Of a DNA stretch of 64,000 nt, positions 4,998 to 46,549 are shown one piece after another. Where the stretch lies: contig NIVC01000001.1 in the NCBI GenBank assembly GCA_002269645.1, positions 1,240,001 to 1,304,000 of the forward strand, read 5' to 3'. The stretch comes from Macrostomum lignano. Taxonomy: Eukaryota. The notes beneath the pieces were generated by a model. The model had not been told where the DNA came from, ran no database searches, and saw nothing but the letters and a program-made list of their open reading frames with translations. Numbering within the stretch: the first letter of the stretch is position 1; each line of letters opens with the position of its first letter. The position numbers and the translations under genes are program-made.

Positions 4998-7900
4998 CTA
5001 CACCCCGTAGCTCTCCTCGCCGTCTCCGCTGGCGCCGCCGGGCAGAGCCTGCCAGGCGGGATTCTTGGCCCAGGTCAGGCTGTCAGGCGGAGGCGGCCGG
5101 TTGGACAGCACGGCCGGATCGCGCTGCACCCGGCTGATCTCGGCACGCTGCTTGTCATCGGCCAGCCTGGCTAGGAAAGTTTCGTCTAATTTCTGCTTCA
5201 CAGCTCGCAGCTCGTCGCTCTCCCATGGCAACGAGCGGACCTTCATCTCAGAGTCTAAATCTGTGCCGCCCTCCTCATCCGAGCTGGTGTAGTCTCTGGT
5301 TAGCACGCTCTCGAATTTCGTTTGGGCAGACGGATCCAGCTCGTCCTTAATGAGCTCGTAGCTCTTCTGCCGCCTGTTCAGCTTCTATAGGCGGACAGTG
5401 GGAATTGGCAGGTTGGTATCCAGGTTAATTGCATAAAGCGACAGAGTGTGAAGAATGGAGCATCCACTCATCATTGCAGAGGAGTGACACACTAATATGG
5501 AGAGTGAAACAGTCATTGCAGAGGAGTGACACACTAATATGGAGAGTGAAACAGTCATTGCAGAGGAGTGACACACTAATATGGAGAGTGAAACAGTCAT
5601 TGCAGAGGAGTGACACACTAATATGGAGAGTGAAACAGTCATTGCAGAGGAGTGACACACTAATATGAAGAGTGAAACAGTCATTGCAGAGGAGTGACAC
5701 TAATATGAAGAGTGAAACAGTCATTGCAGAGGAGTGACACACTAATATGAAGAGTGAAACAGTCATTGCAGAGGAGTGACACACTAATATGGAGAGTGAA
5801 ACAGTCATTGCAGAGGAGTGACACTAATATGAAGAGTGAAACAGTCATTGCAGAGGAGTGACACACTAATATGGAGAGTGAAACAGTCATTGCAGAGGAG
5901 TGACACACTAATATGGAGAGTGAAACAGTCATTGCAGAGGAGTGACACACTAATATGGAGAGTGAAACAGTCATTGCAGAGGAGTGACACACTAATATGG
6001 AGAGTGAAACAGTCATTGCAGAGGAGTGACACACTAATATGGAGAGTGAAACAGTCATTGCAGAGGAGTGACACACTAATATGGAGAGTGAAACAGTCAT
6101 TGCAGAGGAGTGACACACTAATATGAAGAGTGAAACAGTCATTGCAGAGGAGTGACACACTAATATGAAGAGTGAAACAGTCATTGCAGAGGAGTGACAC
6201 TAATATGAAGAGTGAAACAGTCATTGCAGAGGAGTGACACACTAATATGAAGAGTGAAACAGTCATTGCAGAGGAGTGACACACTAATATGAAGAGTGAA
6301 ACAGTCATTGCAGAGGAGTGACACTAATATGAAGAGTGAAACAGTCATTGCAGAGGAGTGACACACTAATATGAAGAGTGAAACAGTCATTGCAGAGGAG
6401 TGACACTAATATGAAGAGTGAAACAGTCATTGCAGAGGAGTGACACTAATATGAAGAGTGAAACAGTCATTGCAGAGGAGTGACACACTAATATGAAGAG
6501 TGAAACAGTCATTGCAGAGGAGTGACACACTAATATGAAGAGTGAAACAGTCATTGCAGAGGAGTGACACACTAATATGGAGAGTGAAACAGTCATTGCA
6601 GAGGAGTGACACACTAATATGAAGAGTGAAACAGTCATTGCAGAGGAGTGACACTAATATGAAGAGTGAAACAGTCATTGCAGAGGAGTGACACTAATAT
6701 GAAGAGTGAAACAGTCATTGCAGAGGAGTGACACTAATATGAAGAGTGAAACAGTCATTGCAGAGGAGTGACACACTAATATGGAGAGTGAAACAGTCAT
6801 TGCAGAGGAGTGACACACTAATATGAAGAGTGAAACAGTCATTGCAGAGGAGTGACACACTAATATGAAGAGTGAAACAGTCATTGCAGAGGAGTGACAC
6901 ACTAATATGGAGAGTGAAACAGTCATTGCAGAGGAGTGACACACTAATATGAAGAGTGAAACAGTCATTGCAGAGGAGTGACACACTAATATGGAGAGCG
7001 AAACACCTACAACTGAGACACAGCGAGATAAGGTGGGGATATAGTACATGTAGTAAAAATCGCAGGAGTGGCTCAACGCCTTCGGCGACAACGGCCCACA
7101 TCTGTTACTAAGGCAACTCAGCCCTTTTCGCTGATTCCTGAGCTAAGATTCGGAAAATCGTAGAAAAAATGCCATTAAATGGCCAGCAGGTGAAAAATTA
7201 CAGACCATTAATCGCCGTATGAATCGCTGGGTGTCCACATTCTTAACAACATTTCTGAACGGATACTTGAGATTCTTGGCGTAATAGTAGCGAAAGTACT
7301 TCACTGCTAGGGCTAAAAACAAGCAAACAAGGATAGATAAAGCAAGGCTAGACACATTCGGATTAGAAAAGGCGGGACGGGCTGGTGCAGGCTGGTCGCT
7401 TCTATCTGGCCTATCCTAGCTTAATTTTCTGTTCAAAAATTCAAAACAGATTTAACAAACGCACCAGACTCTGCCGCACGATATTCATTGTGTCAAGCTC
7501 GCGTTTGCGCAGCTTATAAGCCGAGCGCAAGTTTTTACTATAGTGGCCGCCGAAATAACGCCTGGCTGCGTCTGAACAGTAATTCATTATATATGATTAT
7601 AAAGTTATCAATGTTCTAACTGGCTAGGTTTATTTGGATCGCTTGCAGGGCTGTTGTGCAGAAAGCACAATATCCATTCCATTCCCAACTTTTAGCTGAT
7701 AATTTGTCAGGCGTTTGGCTAAAAATTATGAAGCTACGTTATGGTTACGAGTTATTCAACTATTTATTTGAATTTGAAATAAAATTGGCCTTAAAATCGG
7801 TGCAGCAAAGTGGCTGCGTATCATCTTGTACGAGTACAGCTACTTACCATTCTTTCTTTTCTGTGAACACTCACAATCCTTTCCGTGAACAGTAGCAGTC

Positions 7901-10900
7901 ATTCCCATGAGACACTCACAATCCTTCCCGTGAAAAGTCGCAGTCATTCCACGAGACACTCACGCCATCATTCCCGTGAACAGTCGCAATCATTCCCGTG
8001 AACAGTCGCAATCATTCCCGTGAATAGTCGCAGTCATTCCCGTGAGACACTCACAATCCTTCCCGTGAACAGTCGGAGTCATTCCTGTGAGACACTCACA
8101 ATCCTTCCCGTGAACAGTCGCAGTCATTCCACGAGACACTCACGCCATCATTCCCGTGAACAGTCGCAATCATTCCCGTGAACAGTCGCAATAATTCCTG
8201 CGAACAGTCACAATCATTCCTGCGAACAGTCGCAATCATTCCCGTGAACAGTCCCAATCATTCCTGTGAACAGTCGCAGGTTTTCCCGTGAACACTCACA
8301 ATCCTTCCCGTGAACAGTCGCAATCATTCCCGTGAACAGTCTCAATCATTCCCGTGAACAGTCCCAATCATTCGTGTGAACAGTCGCAATCATTCCTGTG
8401 AACAGTCGCAGTTTTTCCCGTGAACACTCGCAATCATTCCCGTGAACAGTCGCAATCCTTCCCGTGAACAGCTGCAATTCTTCCCGTGGACAGTCGCAGT
8501 CATTCCCGTGAGCAGTCGCAATCATTCACGTGAGACACTCACAAGTGAGGCTGATACGCGAAAAGAAGGCCGATGCCGTTTGAGATGCCGGTATTGCCAG
8601 TTCTTGTAATACTGAGGACTGAGATAGCGATGGCTCTTGGCTGGACAAGCAAATTTGAATTTAGCATTGAGCTGTGTTGTTGTCTTTTAGAACTAGCAAC
8701 AGGAAAACCCGAAGCACTGGTACAAAAGAAGACTACAGGCATCGCAGGGTCTTGTGCGCTTAAATTAGAATGATCTCTTTTACGACATTGCTTACCAGAA
8801 ACAGGTTGACAGAAGTTTTCATTTTCTCCTTCTGAAAGCCGTACTTCTGAGCCGGTTTCAAGGTGGACGTATAATAAATCCGCAGGTATTTGTTGTAAAC
8901 CGAGTCTGCGCGATGAGACCGCGTGCCAGTCGACGGTGCTTATGATTTAATTAATAATCCCCAAAATTCCATTTCCCGAGCTGCACAACAGACTGTTGGG
9001 CAATTGGGCGCGATTTGAGAGATTATAGCCAAATTTAGCTGATAATATTACAAAACTACTACTGCTAGCGATTATAATAAAATGCTAATTAGATAGTTGT
9101 GTCATACAAGGTTAGGTAACAAGTGGGCCAATTCATCGGCCATAGTGTTTGTCACAAGCATGTTTATCGAATTATTTCATATTGTTAACTAACGGCCCTG
9201 CAACGCCCGTATTTTTAGATTATGCAATCAGGTGTACAGGTGTGGGAAAGTGTACAACAATAGGCAAAATAATTAATATCCCTATGCATAAAAGTATTGT
9301 AAAGCAGGGATAAACTAATCGTATAGATACTAGAACCATCAAATAGATTATACCGATATGTAGCGTAAACAACTTTCTACACTACCAACCTTCTAGAGCA
9401 AACTTCTTGTAATTATTGAACCCATTAACACTATAGTAGGCCATAATGTCGTCTACCGATATGTAGTGTAAACAACTTGCTGCATTACTAGCCTTCTATT
9501 GACATAAAGTTGACTACCGATATGTAGCGAATATTGCTTTCTACACGACTTACAAGGAAAAAGTGCAGAATGACATGCCTGAGCTATTAGAATGGAGAAG
9601 CAGACTACTCACTGCGCCAGGCCTCAACATTAGCGGGCTTGTGCCTGCTCAGCTCCAGAGCCTTGTCAATAACCCGGTTGGCTGCCAGCACATTGGCCCT
9701 GGCAGAATAGGGCAGCGAGAAGTCGAACACGTTGGTGCCAGTCTCGTCTTTCAACACTCGATAGGCTTTGCGCAGGATGCCTTTCCATTCGTTTGACAGC
9801 TCGCCGCTAGCTGAAGAGTCCGCGCCGCCCCCGCTGCCGCCTGCGCCACCAGCTCCGCGGCCACCGCTGAAGCTGGCCTGCTGATGCTGCTGCTGCTGGT
9901 ACAGCTGCTGGGACTGCGAGTGCTGATCGAAAATCAAATCGGCTTCCATCAGTACGCAATCGTCGTCGGAATCGATAATCTCGGGCTTAATTAAAGTTGA
10001 TGAAGCGGCTGCCGCAGTCGGACCGGCGGTTGTTGCCAAGGAGCTATCTAGCAGCTTTTTACTAGTGCTACTATTGCTACTGCTATTGCCAACGTTGCCA
10101 ATGGTGACAGCTGCCGAGCCCACAGAGGTTCCGGGCAGGTGAGAAGCGACTGACATTGACTGAGTAACCGGCGGTGGACACTGGAAATGTAATAGTAGGA
10201 TCATTTTGTGCACAATGAGCTCATTGATAGGTGATGTAGGTCATATCGTAATACACTACTTAAAGTAATATTCTAAGAAAATCAATTTAAACTTGCAATC
10301 TATTTTTAGAATGAGTCATATCTATTTTTAGTTTAGAATTTATCTATTTTGAGAGTGAGTCATGTGCAAACGGAAGTGACTCAGAACTCTACAGAGGACC
10401 AACGTTTATTTGTTCAAGGAACCGGATTTCAGCAGCTGTGTTTGCTTAACCCCATATATGGTAATGCTCAAATATGCATGACCGCTTAATCAAACATGTG
10501 ACCTAAGTAAATATCCGATCTCTAACCAGTTTTCCCCAAAATTTTGCTATAAATTCAAGTGAAAATCCGAGTAAAAAAAATTAGACTCAAAGCGGTCTCA
10601 AAGAATACTTGAGAGAAACAAAGAAGACCAATCTTTGAGGGACGAAATCCTGTCCTATTGGTAAGCGCTTACCAGATTTAGTTCTTTGTTGCTAGCGTTA
10701 ATAAATTGATTAATTGAGTTCACGAGAGCCACATTTGAAAAAGACCTTGTTTCCTATGACATATTCCTAGAGGATTTATTGATTTGATTAGAGTTATCCG
10801 TTACGCTTCTTCCAACCTCGAGGACACCGTCAAGACTTCTGATTCGCCCTCGCTTTTGATCGAACCACCCAAAGAAAAAGTTAAGGACTCCCGGGGGTGG

Positions 10901-11354
10901 CAATTCACCGAAGTCAAACCAAGAAGCCTACGAGTCACAAGAGAAGCCGCTCCAGTAAGAGTTACTTTCTTTTGCATATACCCAGGCACTTGTTCCCCAG
11001 TGTCTAGAAGTGGGAGTTTTCGAGTGACTGATCACCACTTCTAAACTCTTCAGTAATAATTATTTAAGGGCAGCCACTCACCAGCGCGTGTTCATCTGCC
11101 ACATTAGCCAGCCGCTGCACAGTGGGATCCAGCACCTCCAACAGGTGGCCGTGCAGTTGGGCCACAATTTTGAAAGCCACTAACAGGTCCCGCACAGCCA
11201 TGTTATCAATCAGCATTGTGGCGCTGGATATTGTGCACTCGAACATTGTCAGCGGGGAGAAGCTGCCGCCTCCGCCTCCGCCGCCGCTGCCGCCGCCACC
11301 GCCAAGCGGCTGATGGTGCCCAGCGGCGTAGGGAGGAATGCCAACTGTTGCCAT
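4998..11354 (-). CDS. Paralogue 2 of the C14orf93-like family. Constant exons 11354-11082, 10180-9613 and 5384-4998, plus one variable exon from 8905-7206
   Basis: Start ACCATGG. Splice sites: CTG|gtgagt, ttccag|TGT, TGGCGCA|gtgagt, cctatag|AAGCTG. The terminal exon KLNRRQKSYE...DYTSSDEE...KVRSLPWESDELRAVKQKLD is colinear with the terminal exon of paralogue 3. Confidence 0.85.
5455..7005. repeat. 42/40-bp minisatellite in the last intron of paralogue 2
   Basis: Unit CAGTCATTGCAGAGGAGTGACAC(AC)TAATATG(G/A)AGAGTGAAA. It explains the MTVSLSILVCHSSA-type ORFs. Confidence 0.95.
7206..7312 (-). CDS. Variable exon D of paralogue 2 (107 nt, phase 1->0)
   Basis: ttgtttttag|CC CTA GCA... encodes LAVKYFRYYYAKNLKYPFRNVVKNVDTQRFIRRLM|gtctgt (weak donor). 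Confidence 0.75.
7465..7571 (-). CDS. Variable exon C of paralogue 2 (107 nt, phase 1->0)
   Basis: actgttcag|AC GCA... encodes AARRYFGGHYSKNLRSAYKLRKRELDTMNIVRQSL|gtgcgt. Ungapped alignment to exon D shares A2, Y5, F6, Y10, K12, N13, L14, D26, T27 and R32. Confidence 0.8.
7862..8542. repeat. About 22-bp minisatellite between variable exons B and C
   Basis: Unit GTGAACAGTCGCAATCATTCCC, with GTGAGACACTCACAATCC variants. Confidence 0.9.
8543..8640 (-). CDS. Variable exon B of paralogue 2 (98 nt, phase 1->0)
   Basis: ttgcttgtccag|CC AAG... encodes KSHRYLSPQYYKNWQYRHLKRHRPSFRVSASL|gtgagt. RYLSPQYYKNW is in the same register as RYFGGHYSKNL (C) and KYFRYYYAKNL (D). Confidence 0.7.
8796..8905 (-). 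CDS. Variable exon A of paralogue 2 (110 nt, phase 1->0)
   Basis: tctcatcgcgcag|AC TCG... encodes SVYNKYLRIYYTSTLKPAQKYGFQKEKMKTSVNLFL|gtaagc. It has the same length and phases as the single equivalent exon of paralogue 3. Confidence 0.75.
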
Positions 11355-26275: not shown

Positions 26276-28907
26276 TTACGCTCGCCCGGTGCACGCTGGC
26301 GGCCGGAAGGAGAACTCTCTGAGCACTTTTTCGCCGACTTTGAGCACCTCGGTGACGCGGTCGGCTGTGCTGGTCGCGGTGTACACGAAGGGAAACCGGC
26401 TGGCCAGCCGTGAGCACAGAAGGCTTCTCTGGCGCCAGTGCGGCAGCGGCACCTCCATCACGTGGGAGAAGCCGCGCGATTGACACAGGGTCCAGTTGAA
26501 GCCCGGGTCCTAAGCCGGGGGAGAGATAAAACAGAGTGCTTGCTTAAATTTATTTGTCTTTTGCGATTAAGCTACTGCAAGTAAAAAGTTGCGTTTTTTT
26601 ACTTTACTGTTCGACTCTGTTCATTAAATTTAGAAAAGAATTTGGCACACAAATAATGCGTTTTCATTTGAAGCGTATGAAAATTGAATCAATACTGTTT
26701 GGAACAACATTTTTATTCGAAATGTATTGCGGATGGGGAAATTTCAAGGCCAACAGGGGGAATTGCTGAGATGTCAAGGCTAACAGGGGGAATTGCTGAG
26801 ATGTCAAGGCTAACAGGGGGAATTGCTGAGGTGTCAAGGCTAACAGGGGGAATTGCTGAGATGTCAAGGCTAACAGGGGGAATTGCTGAGATGTCAAGGC
26901 CAACAGGGGGAATTGCTGAGATGTCAAGGCTAACAGGGGGAATTGCTGAGATGTCAAGGCCAACAGGGGTATTGCTGAGATTTCGATGTATTCCATTCTT
27001 TGTTGGCTCCCCAACAGGAGGGCGCTGCTGATTGCTAGTTAACCCCCTCCCCCAGTCAAGCCGCCATCCCCAACCCCCCAAGAATCAAACCGCTACCCCT
27101 AACCACCCAAGAGTCAAACCGCTACCCCAACCAGTGCAACCACACAAGAGTCAAACCGCTACCCAAACCACCCAAGAGTCAAACCGCTACCCCAACCACC
27201 CAAGAGTCAAACCGCTACCCCAACCACCCAAGAGTCAAACCGCTACCCCAACCACCCAAGAGTCAAACCGCTACCCCAACCACCCAAGAGTCAAACCGCT
27301 ACCCCAACCACCCAAGAGTCAAACCGCTACCCCAACCACCCAAGAGTCAAACCGCTACCCCCAACCACCCAAGAGTAAAGACGCACCCCCCTCCCTCAAA
27401 CCCCCAAGATCCAGTCATACCCCCAACCCCCCAAAAGTGAAGCCGCACATTCAAATTCCCCCAACCCTTGAAAAAGCCAAAGGCGCCATAATCTGAACCA
27501 TCATCAAAATCACCTGAAACTCGGCGCGCATGAAGTCACCGGGCGCGCAGGGCACCGGAAGCATCATGCCCTCGTAGGGGCGCAGCTGCAGTGGGAACAG
27601 GTCCTTCCGTCGGAAGTAGATGTCACCGTAGTAGGCGTGCCGCAGGTGGCTGGCGTTGTGGCCCTGCACGAAGAAGATGTCAACGTAGGGCCAGCGGAAT
27701 TTGCTCCACGGCTGCAGCAGGAAGGCGTCGGAGTCGGCCCGGAAGAACTTCCACTTACCCAGCGCCGCCCACTCCATGAAGCGGTACAGACGGTACTCGG
27801 GCTCCAGCTGTTTCAGGGCCGCCTCCATCTGCTGGCGCTGCTCGATAAGCACCATCACGTCTGCGGAGTGAGTGAGCGAATGGTTGATGATTCTTTTTAA
27901 AGATACCCGTGTCTTAAGATCCCAGAATCAGCCTCTTACAGATTAGCTCCATGTTCCTAAACCCAATATCTATTAATATAATTCCAAATGTCATATTTGG
28001 GATCTCAGAATCCCCAATTTGAAATTCTTTCTCCCAGATGCCAGGTCCAAGTTTACAGTTTCTGCTTCAACAGCTCCCCAATCCGAAATCAGAGCTCCCC
28101 AATCCGAAATCCCAGCTCCCCAATCCGAAATCAGAGCTCCCCAATCCGAAATCAGAGCTCCCCAATCCAAAATCCCAGCTCCCAAATCCGAAATCCCAGC
28201 TCCCCAATCCGAAATCCCAGATCCCCAATCCGAAATCCCAGATCCCCAATCTGAAATCCCAAATCCCCAATCCGAAATCCCAGCTCCCCAATCTGAAATC
28301 CCAGCTCCCCAATCTGAAATCCCAGCTCCCCAATCCGAAACCCCAGCTCCCCAATCCGAAATCCCAGATCCCCAATCCGAAATCGGCCAGCCCCCCAATC
28401 TGAAATCCCAGCTCCCTAATCCGAAATCCCAGCTCCCCAACCAAAGTTTCAAGCTCCGAGACTTCCGATTCCAGCTCCTGAATATTTCATCCCACCAATC
28501 CAGCGTCTTCAGAGCAACTTACCAACGTCGTCATCCCACGGGATGCGTCCGTGATGCCGCAGGCTGCCCAGCAGGGTGCCGGAGCACAGGAAGAAGGTCA
28601 CGCTGGCGTTTTTCATCGCGTCAGCAAAGACGCGCAACACAGAGCGCATCTGCATGGCCTGCTGCTCGGTGACGGGGCTGTAGAAATAGTCCTCGGTCTT
28701 GAGGTGGCCGGACTGGCTGAGCTGCATGATGAGAACGTAGGTGTTCACCAACAACACGAAGATGTTGATGGAGACGATGGAACGGGTTGAGATGAAGCGG
28801 CCGGTGCGCATCTGGGCGAATCGCTTGAACCAGAGGCGGGCTGCCGTTCGGGCCTCGGCTGCTGAGTCTGCGGCTGCGGCTGCTCCTGCGACCTCCGGGT
28901 CCTTCAT
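26276..28907 (-). CDS. LicD-family (fukutin/FKRP-related) nucleotidyltransferase-fold phosphotransferase, type II membrane. Exons 28907-28523, 27860-27514, 26509-26276 (about 321 aa)
   Basis: LicD signature GTLLGSLRHHGRIPWDDDV|D, WPYVDIF and DLFPLQLRPYEG. The N-terminal hydrophobic segment is SIVSINIFVLLVNTYVLIM. Splice sites G|gtaagt, ccgcag|AC, CAG|gtgatt and ggcttag|GAC keep the frame. Confidence 0.9.
26745..26985. repeat. 30-bp minisatellite in LicD intron 2
   Basis: Unit (C/T)AACAGGGGGAATTGCTGAGATGTCAAGGC. Confidence 0.95.
27080..27375. repeat. 28-bp minisatellite in LicD intron 2
   Basis: Unit CAAGAGTCAAACCGCTACCCCAACCACC. Confidence 0.95.
28070..28445. repeat. 21-bp minisatellite in LicD intron 1
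   Basis: Unit CCAATCCGAAATCCCAGCTCC. Confidence 0.95.
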
Positions 28908-29029
28908 CTTAGGGAAGCATGCGCGCTGCGCGGGTTTACGGAGGAGAGGACGAGTCAGGTGATGTACGGAATGTCAAACATGTCGTTAGCATTACAATTG
29001 CAACAAATAGTAGGATGCAGCAGCTGCTC

Positions 29030-44080: not shown

Positions 44081-46549
44081 CCCTTAGATGCCGGGTGGCT
44101 AGCAGAGCTGACCATAGCCATAGAATAGAAGGTGACGAGAAAAAAAATTGGTAGTCTACGAGTATGGCCAGTGAGGCGCAGAATTGCAGCTCCTTTCCTG
44201 CCGAACATGGTCAGCTGAGCTGACCATGGAATAAATAGCGCACTCACTCAGTCTGTAGCACTCTGTAGCGACCACTAGAGCAACTTTCATGTACTAACAA
44301 TGGCACAGAAGAAAGATGCAGTTTATTGTTGAATTAATTTCGAACTATAAAGTTAAAGGGAAAGTTAAAGTTAAAGTTCAAGCAAAAGAAGATATTTGTC
44401 CAAAAGCAACAAAAAATTTATGATTTTGAGACGCAACTACATGTACGCTCGTATAGTAGCATATAATAATACAGGGAACAATATTGTGGTAGAGTGCCGC
44501 AGTTGGACATTTAATTATTTTTGTCTTAACATAAAGGTAAAAAATTAATAGTCAATGCCGAATACAAACGCGAATTATATAGTACGGCTGGTGAAAGGAG
44601 TTCTTTAATTCAGTGATTCACATGCCACCGTTCAAAGCAGGGACTTGGGCACAGTCCAGGTGCATTCGGACACGCACTGCAGCAGAACACGGTGCGCTTC
44701 GCAGTGCCGTTGCGGTAGCACACGCGGCATCGCTTCACCGGCCTCGGGCACGATTCCCTCGGAGGCAGCTTTGATGGAAAGTGCTGCTGAGCTGCGGCCG
44801 CCGCTGGTTGCCTAGCTGCCGTTCGCTGTCTTCCTGGTCCCGTGGAGTCAACCAGTAGGGTGATACAGCTCTCCAGGAATTTGAAGAACTGCAGCCGGCC
44901 ACCGTGCTTTGAGTATACAACCCATGCATTGTGTACAAGCAGCAGGCAGAGATGAAACCCCAACTTATGAAACCACTTGTAGGTTTTGCGGCAGCTGTCG
45001 TACGGTTTCAGCATGGCATCGAGTCGGTCAACGCCTCCCATGCAGCGGTTGTACAGCAGGTTCGAGGCGCTTTTCTGCACTTGCACAGCTTCACCATTCT
45101 TGCGAATTCGGTTCGTCGCTACTTTCTGAGCTGAGCCGTGGGTGTCGATCATGAAGAATGTTTTCAAGCCGCTTTCCTTGCGCTCCAGGATTTTCATGGC
45201 CAGCACTGGCAGCTTCCTCATGAAAACTACGTCATTCAACGGCACCTGCTGACTGCGCAATGCCAACGGCACTCCACGGTCGGCTCGAACAGTTGCTGTC
45301 AGCAGTGTGCTGCGTTCGTACAGAAAAGTCGCAAGCCGTACTGAGGCAAACCACTTGTCGACGAAAAGGTGATAGCCGAAACCGAGCAGGTCCTTGCAAA
45401 GGTGTTTTACGATTTTCTCGCTTAGAGACAGCTGGTCACAACCGAGGTCGTCGCCAAAATGAGAGTTCTCTTCAGCAGTCGAATGTACTAGAAAGTTATA
45501 CAGGTAGCCAGATGCAGACTCACAGGCGCAGTACATTTTAATTCCAACTCTGGCTCTCTTCGATGGGATGTACTGCCTAAACTGAAGGCGCCCCTTGTAC
45601 AGAATCAGGGACTCGTCGACGCTGACCTGCTGCTCCGGCTGGTACACGTTCGCGCAGAGCTGCTGAGCCAGACGGAGCAGCGGCCGAATCTTGTGCAGTG
45701 GGTCGTTCGAGGCGGGTGCTCGTGCATCGTAGAAACGAAGGAAGGCCAGCAGTTGCTTGAATCGGTCACGGGTCAAGCCATTGGGCGATTGAAAAAACGG
45801 AGTACTGTGAATGACACTGGTGCTCCAGTAATCATGCAGTTCCGGCTTCCGTGAGATGCCCATGAACAGGTACATACCCAACAGCTTGGATATCTCACTG
45901 CGGTTTGTGTCCTTCCATGACTTCAGCAAGCTCGAAACATCTTCTCCATCATGTGTCGCCTGCTCATACTCAGCCCAAGCTTTTGCGTTTGTCCACTCCA
46001 CGATCTTATACAGCAGCTCATCGGTTAGAAACAGTCGTAGAAAATATTGGATGTCTTCACGGTCTTCGGGAAGGACAATGCTGGGGTTTACACCCGAAAT
46101 TCCAGTGAAACTGGGGCCGTCTTCAACAATGTCTTCGCCTGGCTCCACAAACTGCCAATCGTCTTCTACTTCGCTGATAGTGACCGACTCAGACGACTCG
46201 GAGTTCTCCGCTATTCCAGCGTCACTTTCGGAGTCGGAAGTCAACAGAATATCCATATTTGGATTGATTTGAATTACATGAATAGAATTGTACAGAATTT
46301 GGCACAGCCTTAATATACTAAAACTGGACTGTCTATGGCCAGTCTTGTACAGTTTTGATAAGCGTGTGTGCAACCCATTCCAAATGTACATTCTCCTTCA
46401 ACCCTAGATTAGACCAGCGATGGCTGGCTTATCGGCAGGAGTGGCAGTGCAATTCAGTTCACTGAAAACTTGAAATAGTCTATGGTCAGCTCTGCTGACC
46501 ATGCCGGCAGGAACGGAGCTTTCTATTTAGGAATTCAGGCTTGAAAAGG
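44081..46549 (-). mobile_element. piggyBac DNA transposon
   Basis: TTAA|CCCTTAGATGCC... ...GGCTTGAAAAGG|TTAA (imperfect TIRs). Subterminal inverted repeats: AGCTCCTTTCCTGCCGAACATGGTCAGC at about 44190 and GCTGACCATGCCGGCAGGAACGGAGCT at about 46495. Encloses a transposase ORF. Confidence 0.85.
44610..46256 (-). CDS. piggyBac transposase, PGBD4-like (548 aa from the ATG at 46256)
   Basis: Uninterrupted ORF with an acidic N-terminus, VSVDES / LFVDKWF / GVDRLD (DDD triad) and a C-terminal Cys-rich domain RCRVC...CSAC...LC...CF..WH. Confidence 0.95.
   Translation of the reverse strand: MDILLTSDSESDAGIAENSESSESVTISEVEDDWQFVEPGEDIVEDGPSFTGISGVNPSIVLPEDREDIQYFLRLFLTDELLYKIVEWTNAKAWAEYEQATHDGEDVSSLLKSWKDTNRSEISKLLGMYLFMGISRKPELHDYWSTSVIHSTPFFQSPNGLTRDRFKQLLAFLRFYDARAPASNDPLHKIRPLLRLAQQLCANVYQPEQQVSVDESLILYKGRLQFRQYIPSKRARVGIKMYCACESASGYLYNFLVHSTAEENSHFGDDLGCDQLSLSEKIVKHLCKDLLGFGYHLFVDKWFASVRLATFLYERSTLLTATVRADRGVPLALRSQQVPLNDVVFMRKLPVLAMKILERKESGLKTFFMIDTHGSAQKVATNRIRKNGEAVQVQKSASNLLYNRCMGGVDRLDAMLKPYDSCRKTYKWFHKLGFHLCLLLVHNAWVVYSKHGGRLQFFKFLESCITLLVDSTGPGRQRTAARQPAAAAAQQHFPSKLPPRESCPRPVKRCRVCYRNGTAKRTVFCCSACPNAPGLCPSPCFERWHVNH

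What the first reader, a model, noticed from the sequence alone, without database searches (positions are those of the whole stretch)
7206..8905. Candidate mutually exclusive exon array: at least four alternative aromatic/basic helices in a C14orf93-like gene
Seen: four short exons lie between constant exon 2 (donor TGGCGCA|gtgagt at 9613, phase 1) and the terminal exon (acceptor at 5384, phase 0). They are A 8905-8796, B 8640-8543, C 7571-7465 and D 7312-7206. Each opens with AG in phase 1, closes with GT in phase 0 and has no stop. Their peptides are homologous in the same register: KYLRIYYTSTL, RYLSPQYYKNW, RYFGGHYSKNL, KYFRYYYAKNL. C and D are both 107 nt and share 10 aligned residues. Joining any two shifts the frame, so only one can be used per productive mRNA. 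Paralogue 3 has one exon at this position, and I found only one in paralogue 1. Established: tandem exon duplication with mutually exclusive use occurs in Dscam1, and variable DNA-binding exons occur in mod(mdg4), lola and fruitless. Inference: one gene makes four or more isoforms differing only in a Tyr/Arg/Lys-rich, probably nucleic-acid-contacting helix. I know of no such array described for this family. The ORF track shows only D, partly.
Basis: partly seen in the sequence, partly recalled or inferred. Interest (0 to 1): 0.92.

Follow-up and report, generated by a model that had tools for sequence, protein, structure and literature searches.

The report
Flatworm alternative-exon array with RNA docking site
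A gene of the flatworm Macrostomum lignano carries four interchangeable copies of one exon plus conserved intron sequences that look like the RNA "docking site and selector" switch known from insect Dscam, so it probably makes four protein versions that differ in one basic helix.

Summary
Four exons (A 8905-8796, B 8640-8543, C 7571-7465, D 7312-7206, minus strand) have AG/GT sites, start in phase 1, end in phase 0, and encode homologous peptides. Only single inclusion gives the full 441-445 aa ORF.

The window is Macrostomum lignano, not an insect. Four paralogous genes carry the same kind of array (3-8 exons, 28 in all, every length 2 mod 3). Exons A, B and C are closer to same-type exons in paralogues than to their own neighbours, and pN is well below pS. 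Public models of paralogues use different single exons.

New here: one conserved intronic element (GGCGTTGCAGGGCC, 9207-9194) lies downstream of constant exon 2 in four of the five genes, and diverged in the fifth. It is complementary to sites 44-97 nt upstream of 20 of 28 variable exons, including B, C and D but not A. This is the Dscam exon-6 docking/selector layout.

The exon encodes the first two thirds of a long helix in a domain remotely related to C14orf93. Nothing supports nucleic-acid contact. For this gene, transcript evidence exists only for exon D.

Verdict: a new member of a known kind, of high interest.

The parts
11082..11354 (-). Constant exon 1 (ATG at 11354; ends in phase 0 before GTGAGT)
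   Evidence: identical to the start of P0001
9613..10180 (-). Constant exon 2 (ends ...EAWR plus one base A; donor GTGAGT)
   Evidence: The same W[RTH]+A|GT(G/A)(A/G)G junction is found in all five array genes.
9189..9212 (-). Candidate docking site, RNA 5'-AUACGGGCGUUGCAGGGCCGUUAG-3' (conserved core 9207-9194)
   Evidence: It is the only conserved block in otherwise unalignable introns of the paralogues. It is the top-ranking 24-nt stretch for pairing with the introns upstream of the variable exons. None of 300 shuffled docks and none of 200 shuffled intron sets reach the observed value.
8987..9013 (-). Best, but not significant, docking-complementary site upstream of exon A
   Evidence: E -18.4, p 0.36; hairpin z -1.0
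8796..8905 (-). Variable exon A (110 nt; NSVYNKYLRIYYTSTLKPAQKYGFQKEKMKTSVNLFL)
   Evidence: The same-type exon in a paralogue is L004 11870-11979, also 110 nt, pN 0.47 / pS 0.84.
8733..8761 (-). Selector upstream of exon B (92 nt from the exon)
   Evidence: duplex with dock -31.2 kcal/mol, p<0.004; hairpin z -5.9, 0/200 shuffles
8543..8640 (-). Variable exon B (98 nt; TKSHRYLSPQYYKNWQYRHLKRHRPSFRVSASL)
   Evidence: The same-type exon in a paralogue is L004 13089-13186, also 98 nt, pN 0.31 / pS 0.83.
7863..8533 (-). 22-nt tandem repeat (about 30 copies) filling most of the intron between B and C; it starts at the donor of B
7635..7656 (-). Selector upstream of exon C (63 nt from the exon)
   Evidence: duplex -25.2 kcal/mol, p 0.003; hairpin z -4.5, 0/200
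7465..7571 (-). Variable exon C (107 nt; NAARRYFGGHYSKNLRSAYKLRKRELDTMNIVRQSL)
   Evidence: The same-type exon in a paralogue is L001 13463-13569, 57% identical, pN 0.30 / pS saturated.
7376..7401 (-). Selector upstream of exon D (63 nt from the exon)
   Evidence: duplex -24.4 kcal/mol, p 0.033; hairpin z -2.8, 3/200
7206..7312 (-). Variable exon D (107 nt; TLAVKYFRYYYAKNLKYPFRNVVKNVDTQRFIRRLM); the only one present in public gene models of this gene
   Evidence: P0001 and P0009 join exon 2 to D
5471..7005 (-). 42-nt tandem repeat (37 copies) in the last intron
4998..5384 (-). Constant terminal exon (KLNRRQKSYE...ESYGV, stop at 5000-4998)

Best explanation
This is a cluster of four tandemly duplicated, mutually exclusive exons in a Macrostomum lignano gene of a helical-domain family remotely related to C14orf93.

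Shown:
- The four exons are homologous, share phases, and have lengths of 2 mod 3.
- Only mRNAs with exactly one of them keep the frame.
- The array is older than the duplication that produced at least five paralogous genes.
- Individual exon types (A, B, C) have been kept under purifying selection.

Inferred:
- Choice of exon is made at the RNA level, as in the Dscam exon 6 cluster. A single docking site in the intron after constant exon 2 (9212-9189) can pair with only one selector at a time. Selectors lie 63-92 nt upstream of exons B, C and D. Pairing loops out the exons in between and brings that exon to the exon 2 donor.
- Frame disruption and mRNA surveillance remove products that carry none or several variable exons.
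- Exon A, the first in the array, has no clear selector. It may be a default or weakly used exon.

Each isoform replaces about 33-37 residues that form the first two thirds of a 56-60 residue helix. The positions [KR]-Y-[FL]-x3-[YF]-x3-L-[KR] stay fixed while the other positions, which carry many basic residues, change. This presumably alters the binding specificity for an unknown partner.
For: - Exon anatomy and frames.
- Independent homology test.
- Arrays of 7, 8, 3 and 6 homologous exons lie at the same intron in L001-L004. Every one is 2 mod 3 (92, 95, 98, 107 x15, 110, 119 nt) and nearly all have good AG/GT sites.
- Cross-gene matches: A with L004 exon 1, B with L004 exon 3, and C with L001 exon 6 score 66-106, against 20-54 for any exon of the same gene. 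pN is 0.30-0.47 against pS 0.83-1.0.
- Public isoforms that use different single exons of one gene, both spliced to KLNRRQK: P0004 and P0008.
- Docking element: CGTTGCAGGGC occurs exactly once in each of L001, L002 and L004, and the 14-mer occurs once in the 64-kb window. Each time it sits in the intron after exon 2 on the coding strand.
- It is the best of all 24-nt stretches of that intron for pairing with the upstream introns in four of four genes.
- No shuffled dock (0/300) or shuffled intron set (0/200) reaches the observed value in any of the five genes.
- 20 of 28 exons have a selector at p<=0.05, and the reverse-complement control is much weaker.
- Hairpin z-scores are -5.9, -4.5 and -2.8 for B, C and D.
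- Selectors match the gene-specific flanks of their own dock, for example L004 CCATCGCA with TTGCGATGG and L002 GCTCTCTCATT with AATGAGAGA. One G-C pair becomes A-U in L003.
- Helix: AlphaFold2 models of two paralogue isoforms with different exon types place the segment in one long helix with pLDDT 85-97.
Against: - No transcript data could be reached. For this gene only the exon 2 to D junction appears in public models, and both models read through or stop at the donor of D.
- Exon A has no significant selector and a weak acceptor. Exon D has a weak donor and no clear same-type exon in a paralogue.
- The docking windows are G+C-rich and were partly chosen by scanning, so the shuffle tests are somewhat optimistic.
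- In the cross-gene test a gene's own dock is clearly best in only three of five genes.
- An ungapped 14-mer pairing count was significant for only a minority of exons.
- Pairing is predicted, not shown.
Confidence: 0.7

Rival explanations
1. The array is real and mutually exclusive only through frame and mRNA surveillance (or protein regulators). The conserved GGCGTTGCAGGGCC element is a protein-binding splicing element, and its complementarity to the upstream introns has no role as an RNA duplex.
For: All multi-exon and skipped forms carry premature stops. A skipped, frameshifted transcript model exists in a paralogue (P0006). Exon A and the first exons of two other arrays lack selectors. 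The cross-gene dock test is only modest.
Against: Complementarity is strand-specific. It is found at a regular distance upstream of 20 of 28 exons. It extends into gene-specific flanks of each dock. The conserved element is the best-pairing stretch in four of four genes in an unbiased scan.
Confidence: 0.15
2. Only exon D (perhaps with one other) is used in this gene. A, B and C are decaying leftovers of exon duplication.
For: Both public models of this gene contain only D. A has a poor acceptor and no selector.
Against: A, B and C keep open frames, correct phases and AG/GT sites. B and C match exons in paralogous genes with pN about one third of pS, and both keep significant selectors. Relics of that age would have accumulated stops and indels.
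Confidence: 0.1
3. The variable exons act mainly as alternative ends. Read-through of their donors gives truncated proteins that lack the C-terminal half of the domain.
For: P0001 (this gene, after D) and P0007 (paralogue) both read through the donor to a nearby stop.
Against: Full-length models spliced to the terminal exon exist for paralogues (P0002, P0003, P0004, P0008). Conservation of phase 0 ends and strong GTAAG/GTGAG donors in nearly all 28 exons is not expected for terminal exons. The read-through here is more simply explained by the weak donor of D and the 1.5-kb satellite in the last intron.
Confidence: 0.04
4. Chance open frames with fortuitous AG/GT sites.
For: Short stop-free AG...GT segments are common in 4.2 kb of intron.
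Against: The independent HMM test, the 28 homologous exons that all keep the same phase, and the cross-gene exon matches.
Confidence: 0.01

Closest known systems
Dscam1 exon 6 cluster of insects (docking site / selector sequences; Graveley model as summarised in PMC6071210)
   Same: Both are tandemly duplicated exons of near-equal length and identical phase. Both have one docking site in the intron just downstream of the preceding constant exon, and a selector complementary to it upstream of the variable exons. Only one pairing is possible at a time.
   Different: This array has 4 exons (3-8 in paralogues) rather than 48. It is in a flatworm, not an arthropod, and in an unrelated gene with a helical domain rather than an Ig domain. 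The first exon of the array lacks a selector. No repressor is known and there is no experimental evidence. The same system is present in at least five paralogous genes.
Other multi-exon MXE clusters with competing RNA structures (Drosophila MRP with 8 exons, Mhc, 14-3-3zeta; human ATE1; PMC6071210, PMC7797038)
   Same: Cluster size is similar (3-8 exons). They also arose by tandem exon duplication and rely on competing RNA pairings.
   Different: In MRP, Mhc and 14-3-3zeta the docking site lies downstream of the cluster (PMC6071210). Here it lies upstream, as in Dscam exon 6.
Vertebrate C14orf93 (RTFC; Pfam DUF4616, PF15394)
   Same: The motifs are in the same order...A.xY[FY]..[KR]..., KL.RR..., acidic SSDEE-like patch, L.WES..L..K..LD. 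Profile comparison through invertebrate relatives gives 99.8% for the flatworm family against the invertebrate family and 94% for the invertebrate family against C14orf93.
   Different: The direct profile match is weak (3% probability, E 0.013). Pfam DUF4616 is not hit. No exon array is reported for C14orf93 in the papers found.
mod(mdg4), lola, fruitless
   Same: One gene produces many isoforms that differ in one module.
   Different: Those genes use alternative 3' terminal exons (partly by trans-splicing) that encode zinc fingers. Here an internal cassette is exchanged and no DNA-binding domain is recognisable.

Membership tests
Tandem-duplicated mutually exclusive exon cluster | Neighbouring exons in one intron, same strand, similar length | tested here: met
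   110, 98, 107 and 107 nt between exon 2 and the terminal exon
Tandem-duplicated mutually exclusive exon cluster | Same start and end phase; joint inclusion or skipping destroys the frame | tested here: met
   All are phase 1 to 0 and 2 mod 3. Of 16 combinations, only the 4 single inclusions give the full ORF.
Tandem-duplicated mutually exclusive exon cluster | Sequence homology between the exons | tested here: met
   Independent HMM E-values from 8e-9 to 1.5e-2, with the next hit at 0.25
Tandem-duplicated mutually exclusive exon cluster | Exactly one exon per mature mRNA (transcript evidence) | tested here: inconclusive
   Paralogue models P0004/P0008 and P0003/P0007 use different single exons. 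For this gene only D is in public models.
Docking site / selector competing RNA structures (Dscam exon 6 type) | One conserved docking element in the intron next to the cluster | tested here: met
   GGCGTTGCAGGGCC occurs once in the window (9207-9194). The same core is at the same place in L001, L002 and L004, and diverged in L003. The rest of these introns is unalignable.
Docking site / selector competing RNA structures (Dscam exon 6 type) | A selector complementary to the docking site upstream of every variable exon | tested here: inconclusive
   Met for B, C and D (p <0.004, 0.003, 0.033) but not for A (p 0.36). Overall 20 of 28 exons in five genes pass.
Docking site / selector competing RNA structures (Dscam exon 6 type) | Covariation that maintains pairing | tested here: inconclusive
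   Selectors follow the gene-specific dock flanks, and one G-C pair becomes A-U in L003. A gene's own dock is clearly best in only 3 of 5 genes.
Docking site / selector competing RNA structures (Dscam exon 6 type) | Disrupting and restoring the pairing changes exon choice | not testable with these tools
   Needs minigenes or transgenic worms
C14orf93 / DUF4616 (PF15394) | Match to the Pfam model above its cut-off | tested here: not met
   No hit at E<=1 for the four isoforms, nor at E<=10 for 31 family members
C14orf93 / DUF4616 (PF15394) | Profile-profile homology to true C14orf93 proteins | tested here: inconclusive
   Direct comparison gives 3% probability and E 0.013, but with motifs in the same order. 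Through invertebrate relatives the values are 99.8% (E 1e-29) and 94% (E 1e-7).
Variable DNA-binding exon genes (mod(mdg4), lola, fru) | Alternative 3' exons encoding a recognisable DNA-binding domain | tested here: not met
   The variable unit is an internal cassette. There is no DNA-binding family hit. The best Foldseek matches have E>=3.8.

The most novel reading that the evidence does not exclude
A Dscam-type docking/selector exon-choice system arose independently in a flatworm and was copied with the gene. A family of at least five genes then offers 28 or more alternative versions of one basic helix. That would be a diversified recognition repertoire, with isoforms possibly chosen cell by cell, in a protein superfamily (C14orf93-like) whose molecular function is unknown.
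Probability: 0.3. Interest if true: 0.85.

Novelty: new member of a known kind. Interest (0 to 1): 0.7.

Why it matters
Clusters of more than three mutually exclusive exons are rare even in Drosophila (list in PMC6071210). In the papers I could search, docking/selector control is described for arthropod and a few mammalian genes, and not for flatworms.

A small array of 4 to 8 exons, with an upstream docking site and at least five diverged paralogue copies, would give a compact second system for asking how one pairing leads to exclusive exon choice. It would also test the proposal that tandem exon duplication creates such switches by itself (PMC6071210).

It also marks which helix of the uncharacterised C14orf93-like domain is the variable, and presumably specificity-determining, surface. 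Finally, it explains why the public gene models at these loci are truncated or mis-joined.

Tried and rejected
- Pfam scans of the four isoforms, of ten relatives and of 31 family members: no informative family.
- Foldseek of the AlphaFold2 model against PDB: nothing significant. The weak Zeste and TEA DNA-binding-domain matches (probability <=0.15) are not usable.
- First RNA test, unrestricted duplex folding of whole introns against each other: only noise, with |z|<2 (one search timed out).
- The repeat finder inverted pairs were at chance level on their own. One of them (9191-9203 with 7643-7655) later proved to be the pairing of the dock with the exon C selector.
- An ungapped 14-mer pair count misses bulged selectors and was significant for only a minority of exons. 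Energy-based tests were used instead.
- Exact look-ups of P0005 and P0007 found no contig.
- A protein search with the four isoform C-termini found no transcript-derived proteins with A, B or C.
- No Rfam family in the window.
- The 22-nt repeat units pair with the dock only within the range of shuffled controls.


Full report
**What is in the sequence.**
On the minus strand I reconstructed a gene with these parts:
- exon 1 at 11354-11082;
- exon 2 at 10180-9613, ending ...EAWR plus one base, with donor GTGAGT;
- four candidate exons, A 8905-8796 (110 nt), B 8640-8543 (98 nt), C 7571-7465 (107 nt) and D 7312-7206 (107 nt);
- a terminal exon at 5384-4998.

Each exon follows an AG, precedes a GT, starts in phase 1, ends in phase 0, and is open in that frame. 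Joining exon 1, exon 2, one variable exon and the terminal exon gives ORFs of 445, 441, 444 and 444 aa. The skipped form and all 11 combinations of two to four exons end prematurely. The peptides carry net charge +6 to +8 and 4-8 aromatic residues.

**Where it comes from.**
The best protein match, at 99% identity, is BOX15_Mlig028318g1 of the flatworm Macrostomum lignano (P0001). That model, and a second public model (P0009), join exon 2 to exon D. P0001 then reads through the weak donor of D (GTCTGT), while P0009 simply ends one residue before it. The last intron holds 37 copies of a 42-nt repeat, which probably broke the transcript assemblies. The comparison with insect genes is therefore an analogy only.

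**Is it more than chance?**
I fetched the loci of four paralogues that are 44-59% identical in protein (L001-L004). A profile of the variable peptides was scanned over all six frames of the window and these loci. Every hit above 10 bits lay between exon 2 and the terminal exon of a family gene, on the coding strand.

A second profile, built only from the exons of the other loci, found C (8e-9), A (1e-5), D (2e-3) and B (1.5e-2) in the window. It also found the single exon of the neighbouring paralogue, and the next hit had E 0.25.

The paralogues carry arrays of 7, 8, 3 and 6 such exons. All 28 exons have lengths of 2 mod 3 (92, 95, 98, 107 in fifteen cases, 110, 119). Nearly all have a polypyrimidine-AG acceptor 11 nt before the [KR]Y motif and a GTAAG or GTGAG donor.

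**Age and constraint.**
Each of A, B and C is much closer to an exon at the matching place in another gene than to its own neighbours:
- A with L004 exon 1, both 110 nt;
- B with L004 exon 3, both 98 nt;
- C with L001 exon 6.

These pairs score 66-106, against 20-54 within a gene. The array therefore predates the gene duplications. For these pairs pN is 0.30-0.47 while pS is 0.83-1.0, that is, saturated. D has no clear same-type exon in a paralogue.

**Use in transcripts.**
Public models of paralogues use different single exons of one gene, correctly spliced to KLNRRQK. P0004 uses L003 12554-12672 and P0008 uses L003 14396-14502. P0003 and P0007/P0016 use different exons of L002. P0006 is an exon-skipped, frameshifted form, and P0005 strings parts of three exons together. 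I could not reach RNA-seq data, so use of A, B and C in this gene is inferred.

**A docking site and selectors.**
I aligned the introns after exon 2 in the five genes. They were unalignable except for one block. The 11-mer CGTTGCAGGGC occurs exactly once in each of L001, L002 and L004, and GGCGTTGCAGGGCC occurs once in the whole window (9207-9194). Each time it lies in that intron on the coding strand. L003 has a diverged copy.

I then scored every 24-nt stretch of that intron for duplex energy with the introns upstream of all variable exons. The conserved block ranked first in the window, L001, L002 and L004. For the window the mean was -24.8 kcal/mol against a background of -11.6 +/- 2.9. 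No shuffled dock (0/300) and no shuffled intron set (0/200) reached the observed value in any of the five genes.

Exon by exon, 20 of 28 have a complementary site at p<=0.05, located 44-97 nt upstream. The reverse-complement control pairs far less well.

In the window the selector sites are:

| Exon | Selector site | Duplex energy (kcal/mol) |
|---|---|---|
| B | 8761-8733 | -31.2 |
| C | 7656-7635 | -25.2 |
| D | 7401-7376 | -24.4 |

Dock-linker-selector hairpins gave z -5.9, -4.5 and -2.8 against dinucleotide shuffles. Exon A has no significant site (p 0.36, z -1.0), and neither do the first exons of L001 and L004.

Selectors also follow the gene-specific flanks of their own dock, and one G-C pair becomes A-U in L003. 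A cross-gene test is only modestly in favour of co-evolution.

This layout is that of the Dscam exon 6 cluster as described in PMC6071210: one dock just downstream of the constant exon and a selector upstream of the variable exons.

**The protein.**
A profile search of 1.84 billion representatives found 143 relatives. They comprise many M. lignano paralogues and uncharacterised proteins of amphioxus, a sea star, abalone, Lingula, a mussel, an acorn worm and one fungus. In those relatives the variable segment corresponds to a conserved A.x.Y[FY].S.[KR]DD..R stretch just before KL.RR..AL.

True C14orf93 proteins (Pfam DUF4616) were fetched with a query I recalled from memory, which proved about 96% identical to database entries. 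Profile comparisons gave:
- 99.8% for the flatworm family against the invertebrate family;
- 94% for the invertebrate family against C14orf93;
- only 3% for the direct comparison, though with motifs in the same order.

Pfam itself is never hit. 'C14orf93-like' is therefore fair only as a remote relationship.

AlphaFold2 models of P0002 and P0004, which carry different exon types of 36 and 40 residues, put the segment in one helix of 56 or 60 residues with pLDDT 85-97. Foldseek found nothing significant in PDB. I found no evidence for nucleic-acid binding. The papers on C14orf93 concern thyroid function and a secreted chemoattractant role.

**Verdict.**
The mechanism I consider most likely is docking/selector pairing backed by frame control. 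The weak points are the lack of transcript data for A, B and C, the missing selector and poor acceptor of A, and the fact that the pairing is predicted rather than shown.

I found no paper describing such an array in M. lignano, in flatworms or in C14orf93 genes. It is a new member of a known kind, and interesting because the kind has been described almost only in arthropods.

Noticed in passing
window 7863-8533: A 22-nt tandem repeat (about 30 copies) starts right at the donor of exon B. Many units carry GTGAGT-like and CAG-like strings, so the intron between B and C is full of splice-site look-alikes. Pairing of the units with the docking site is within the range of shuffled controls.
   Followed up: partly
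window 5471-7005: A 42-nt tandem repeat with 37 copies at 97% identity fills most of the last intron. It shares the core GACTGTT(T)CAC with the 22-nt repeat. It probably explains why public gene models stop after exon D.
   Followed up: partly
window 9351-9395, 9454-9498, 9515-9559: Three 45-nt direct repeats (71-87% identical) lie in the intron after exon 2, upstream of the docking site. Their role is unknown.
   Followed up: no
window 16019-12956 and 3519-~2000 (minus strand): Two further family paralogues flank the array gene in tandem. The upstream one has a single 110-nt exon (13917-13808) at the array position and no docking element. The 3' exons of the downstream one were not found in the window. 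The layout of a single-exon paralogue next to an array paralogue recurs in L001, L003 and L004.
   Followed up: partly
window A (8905-8796); L001 11936-12042; L004 11870-11979: The first exon of the array (the 'TLKP' type) lacks a significant selector in three genes, and in two of them (window A, L004) it also has a poor polypyrimidine tract. It may be regulated differently or serve as a default exon.
   Followed up: partly
L001 11936-12501 (protein P0005); L004 (protein P0006): Public model P0005 joins parts of three variable exons through non-homologous splice sites. P0006 skips the array and is frameshifted. Annotation at these loci is unreliable.
   Followed up: partly
window 44613-46397 (minus strand): An intact 595-aa ORF encodes a piggyBac-type transposase (Pfam DDE_Tnp_1_7, E 2.6e-70, plus its zinc finger).
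   Followed up: partly
window 28512-28973 (minus strand): An ORF fragment matches the LicD family (E 5.7e-9), probably an exon of a neighbouring gene.
   Followed up: no
relatives P0132, P0169-P0171, P0056, P0174, P0085, P0096: Relatives in abalone, Lingula and amphioxus occur as several similar 'uncharacterized' genes per genome, so the wider family tends to be multi-copy. Whether it is linked to mobile elements was not examined.
   Followed up: no
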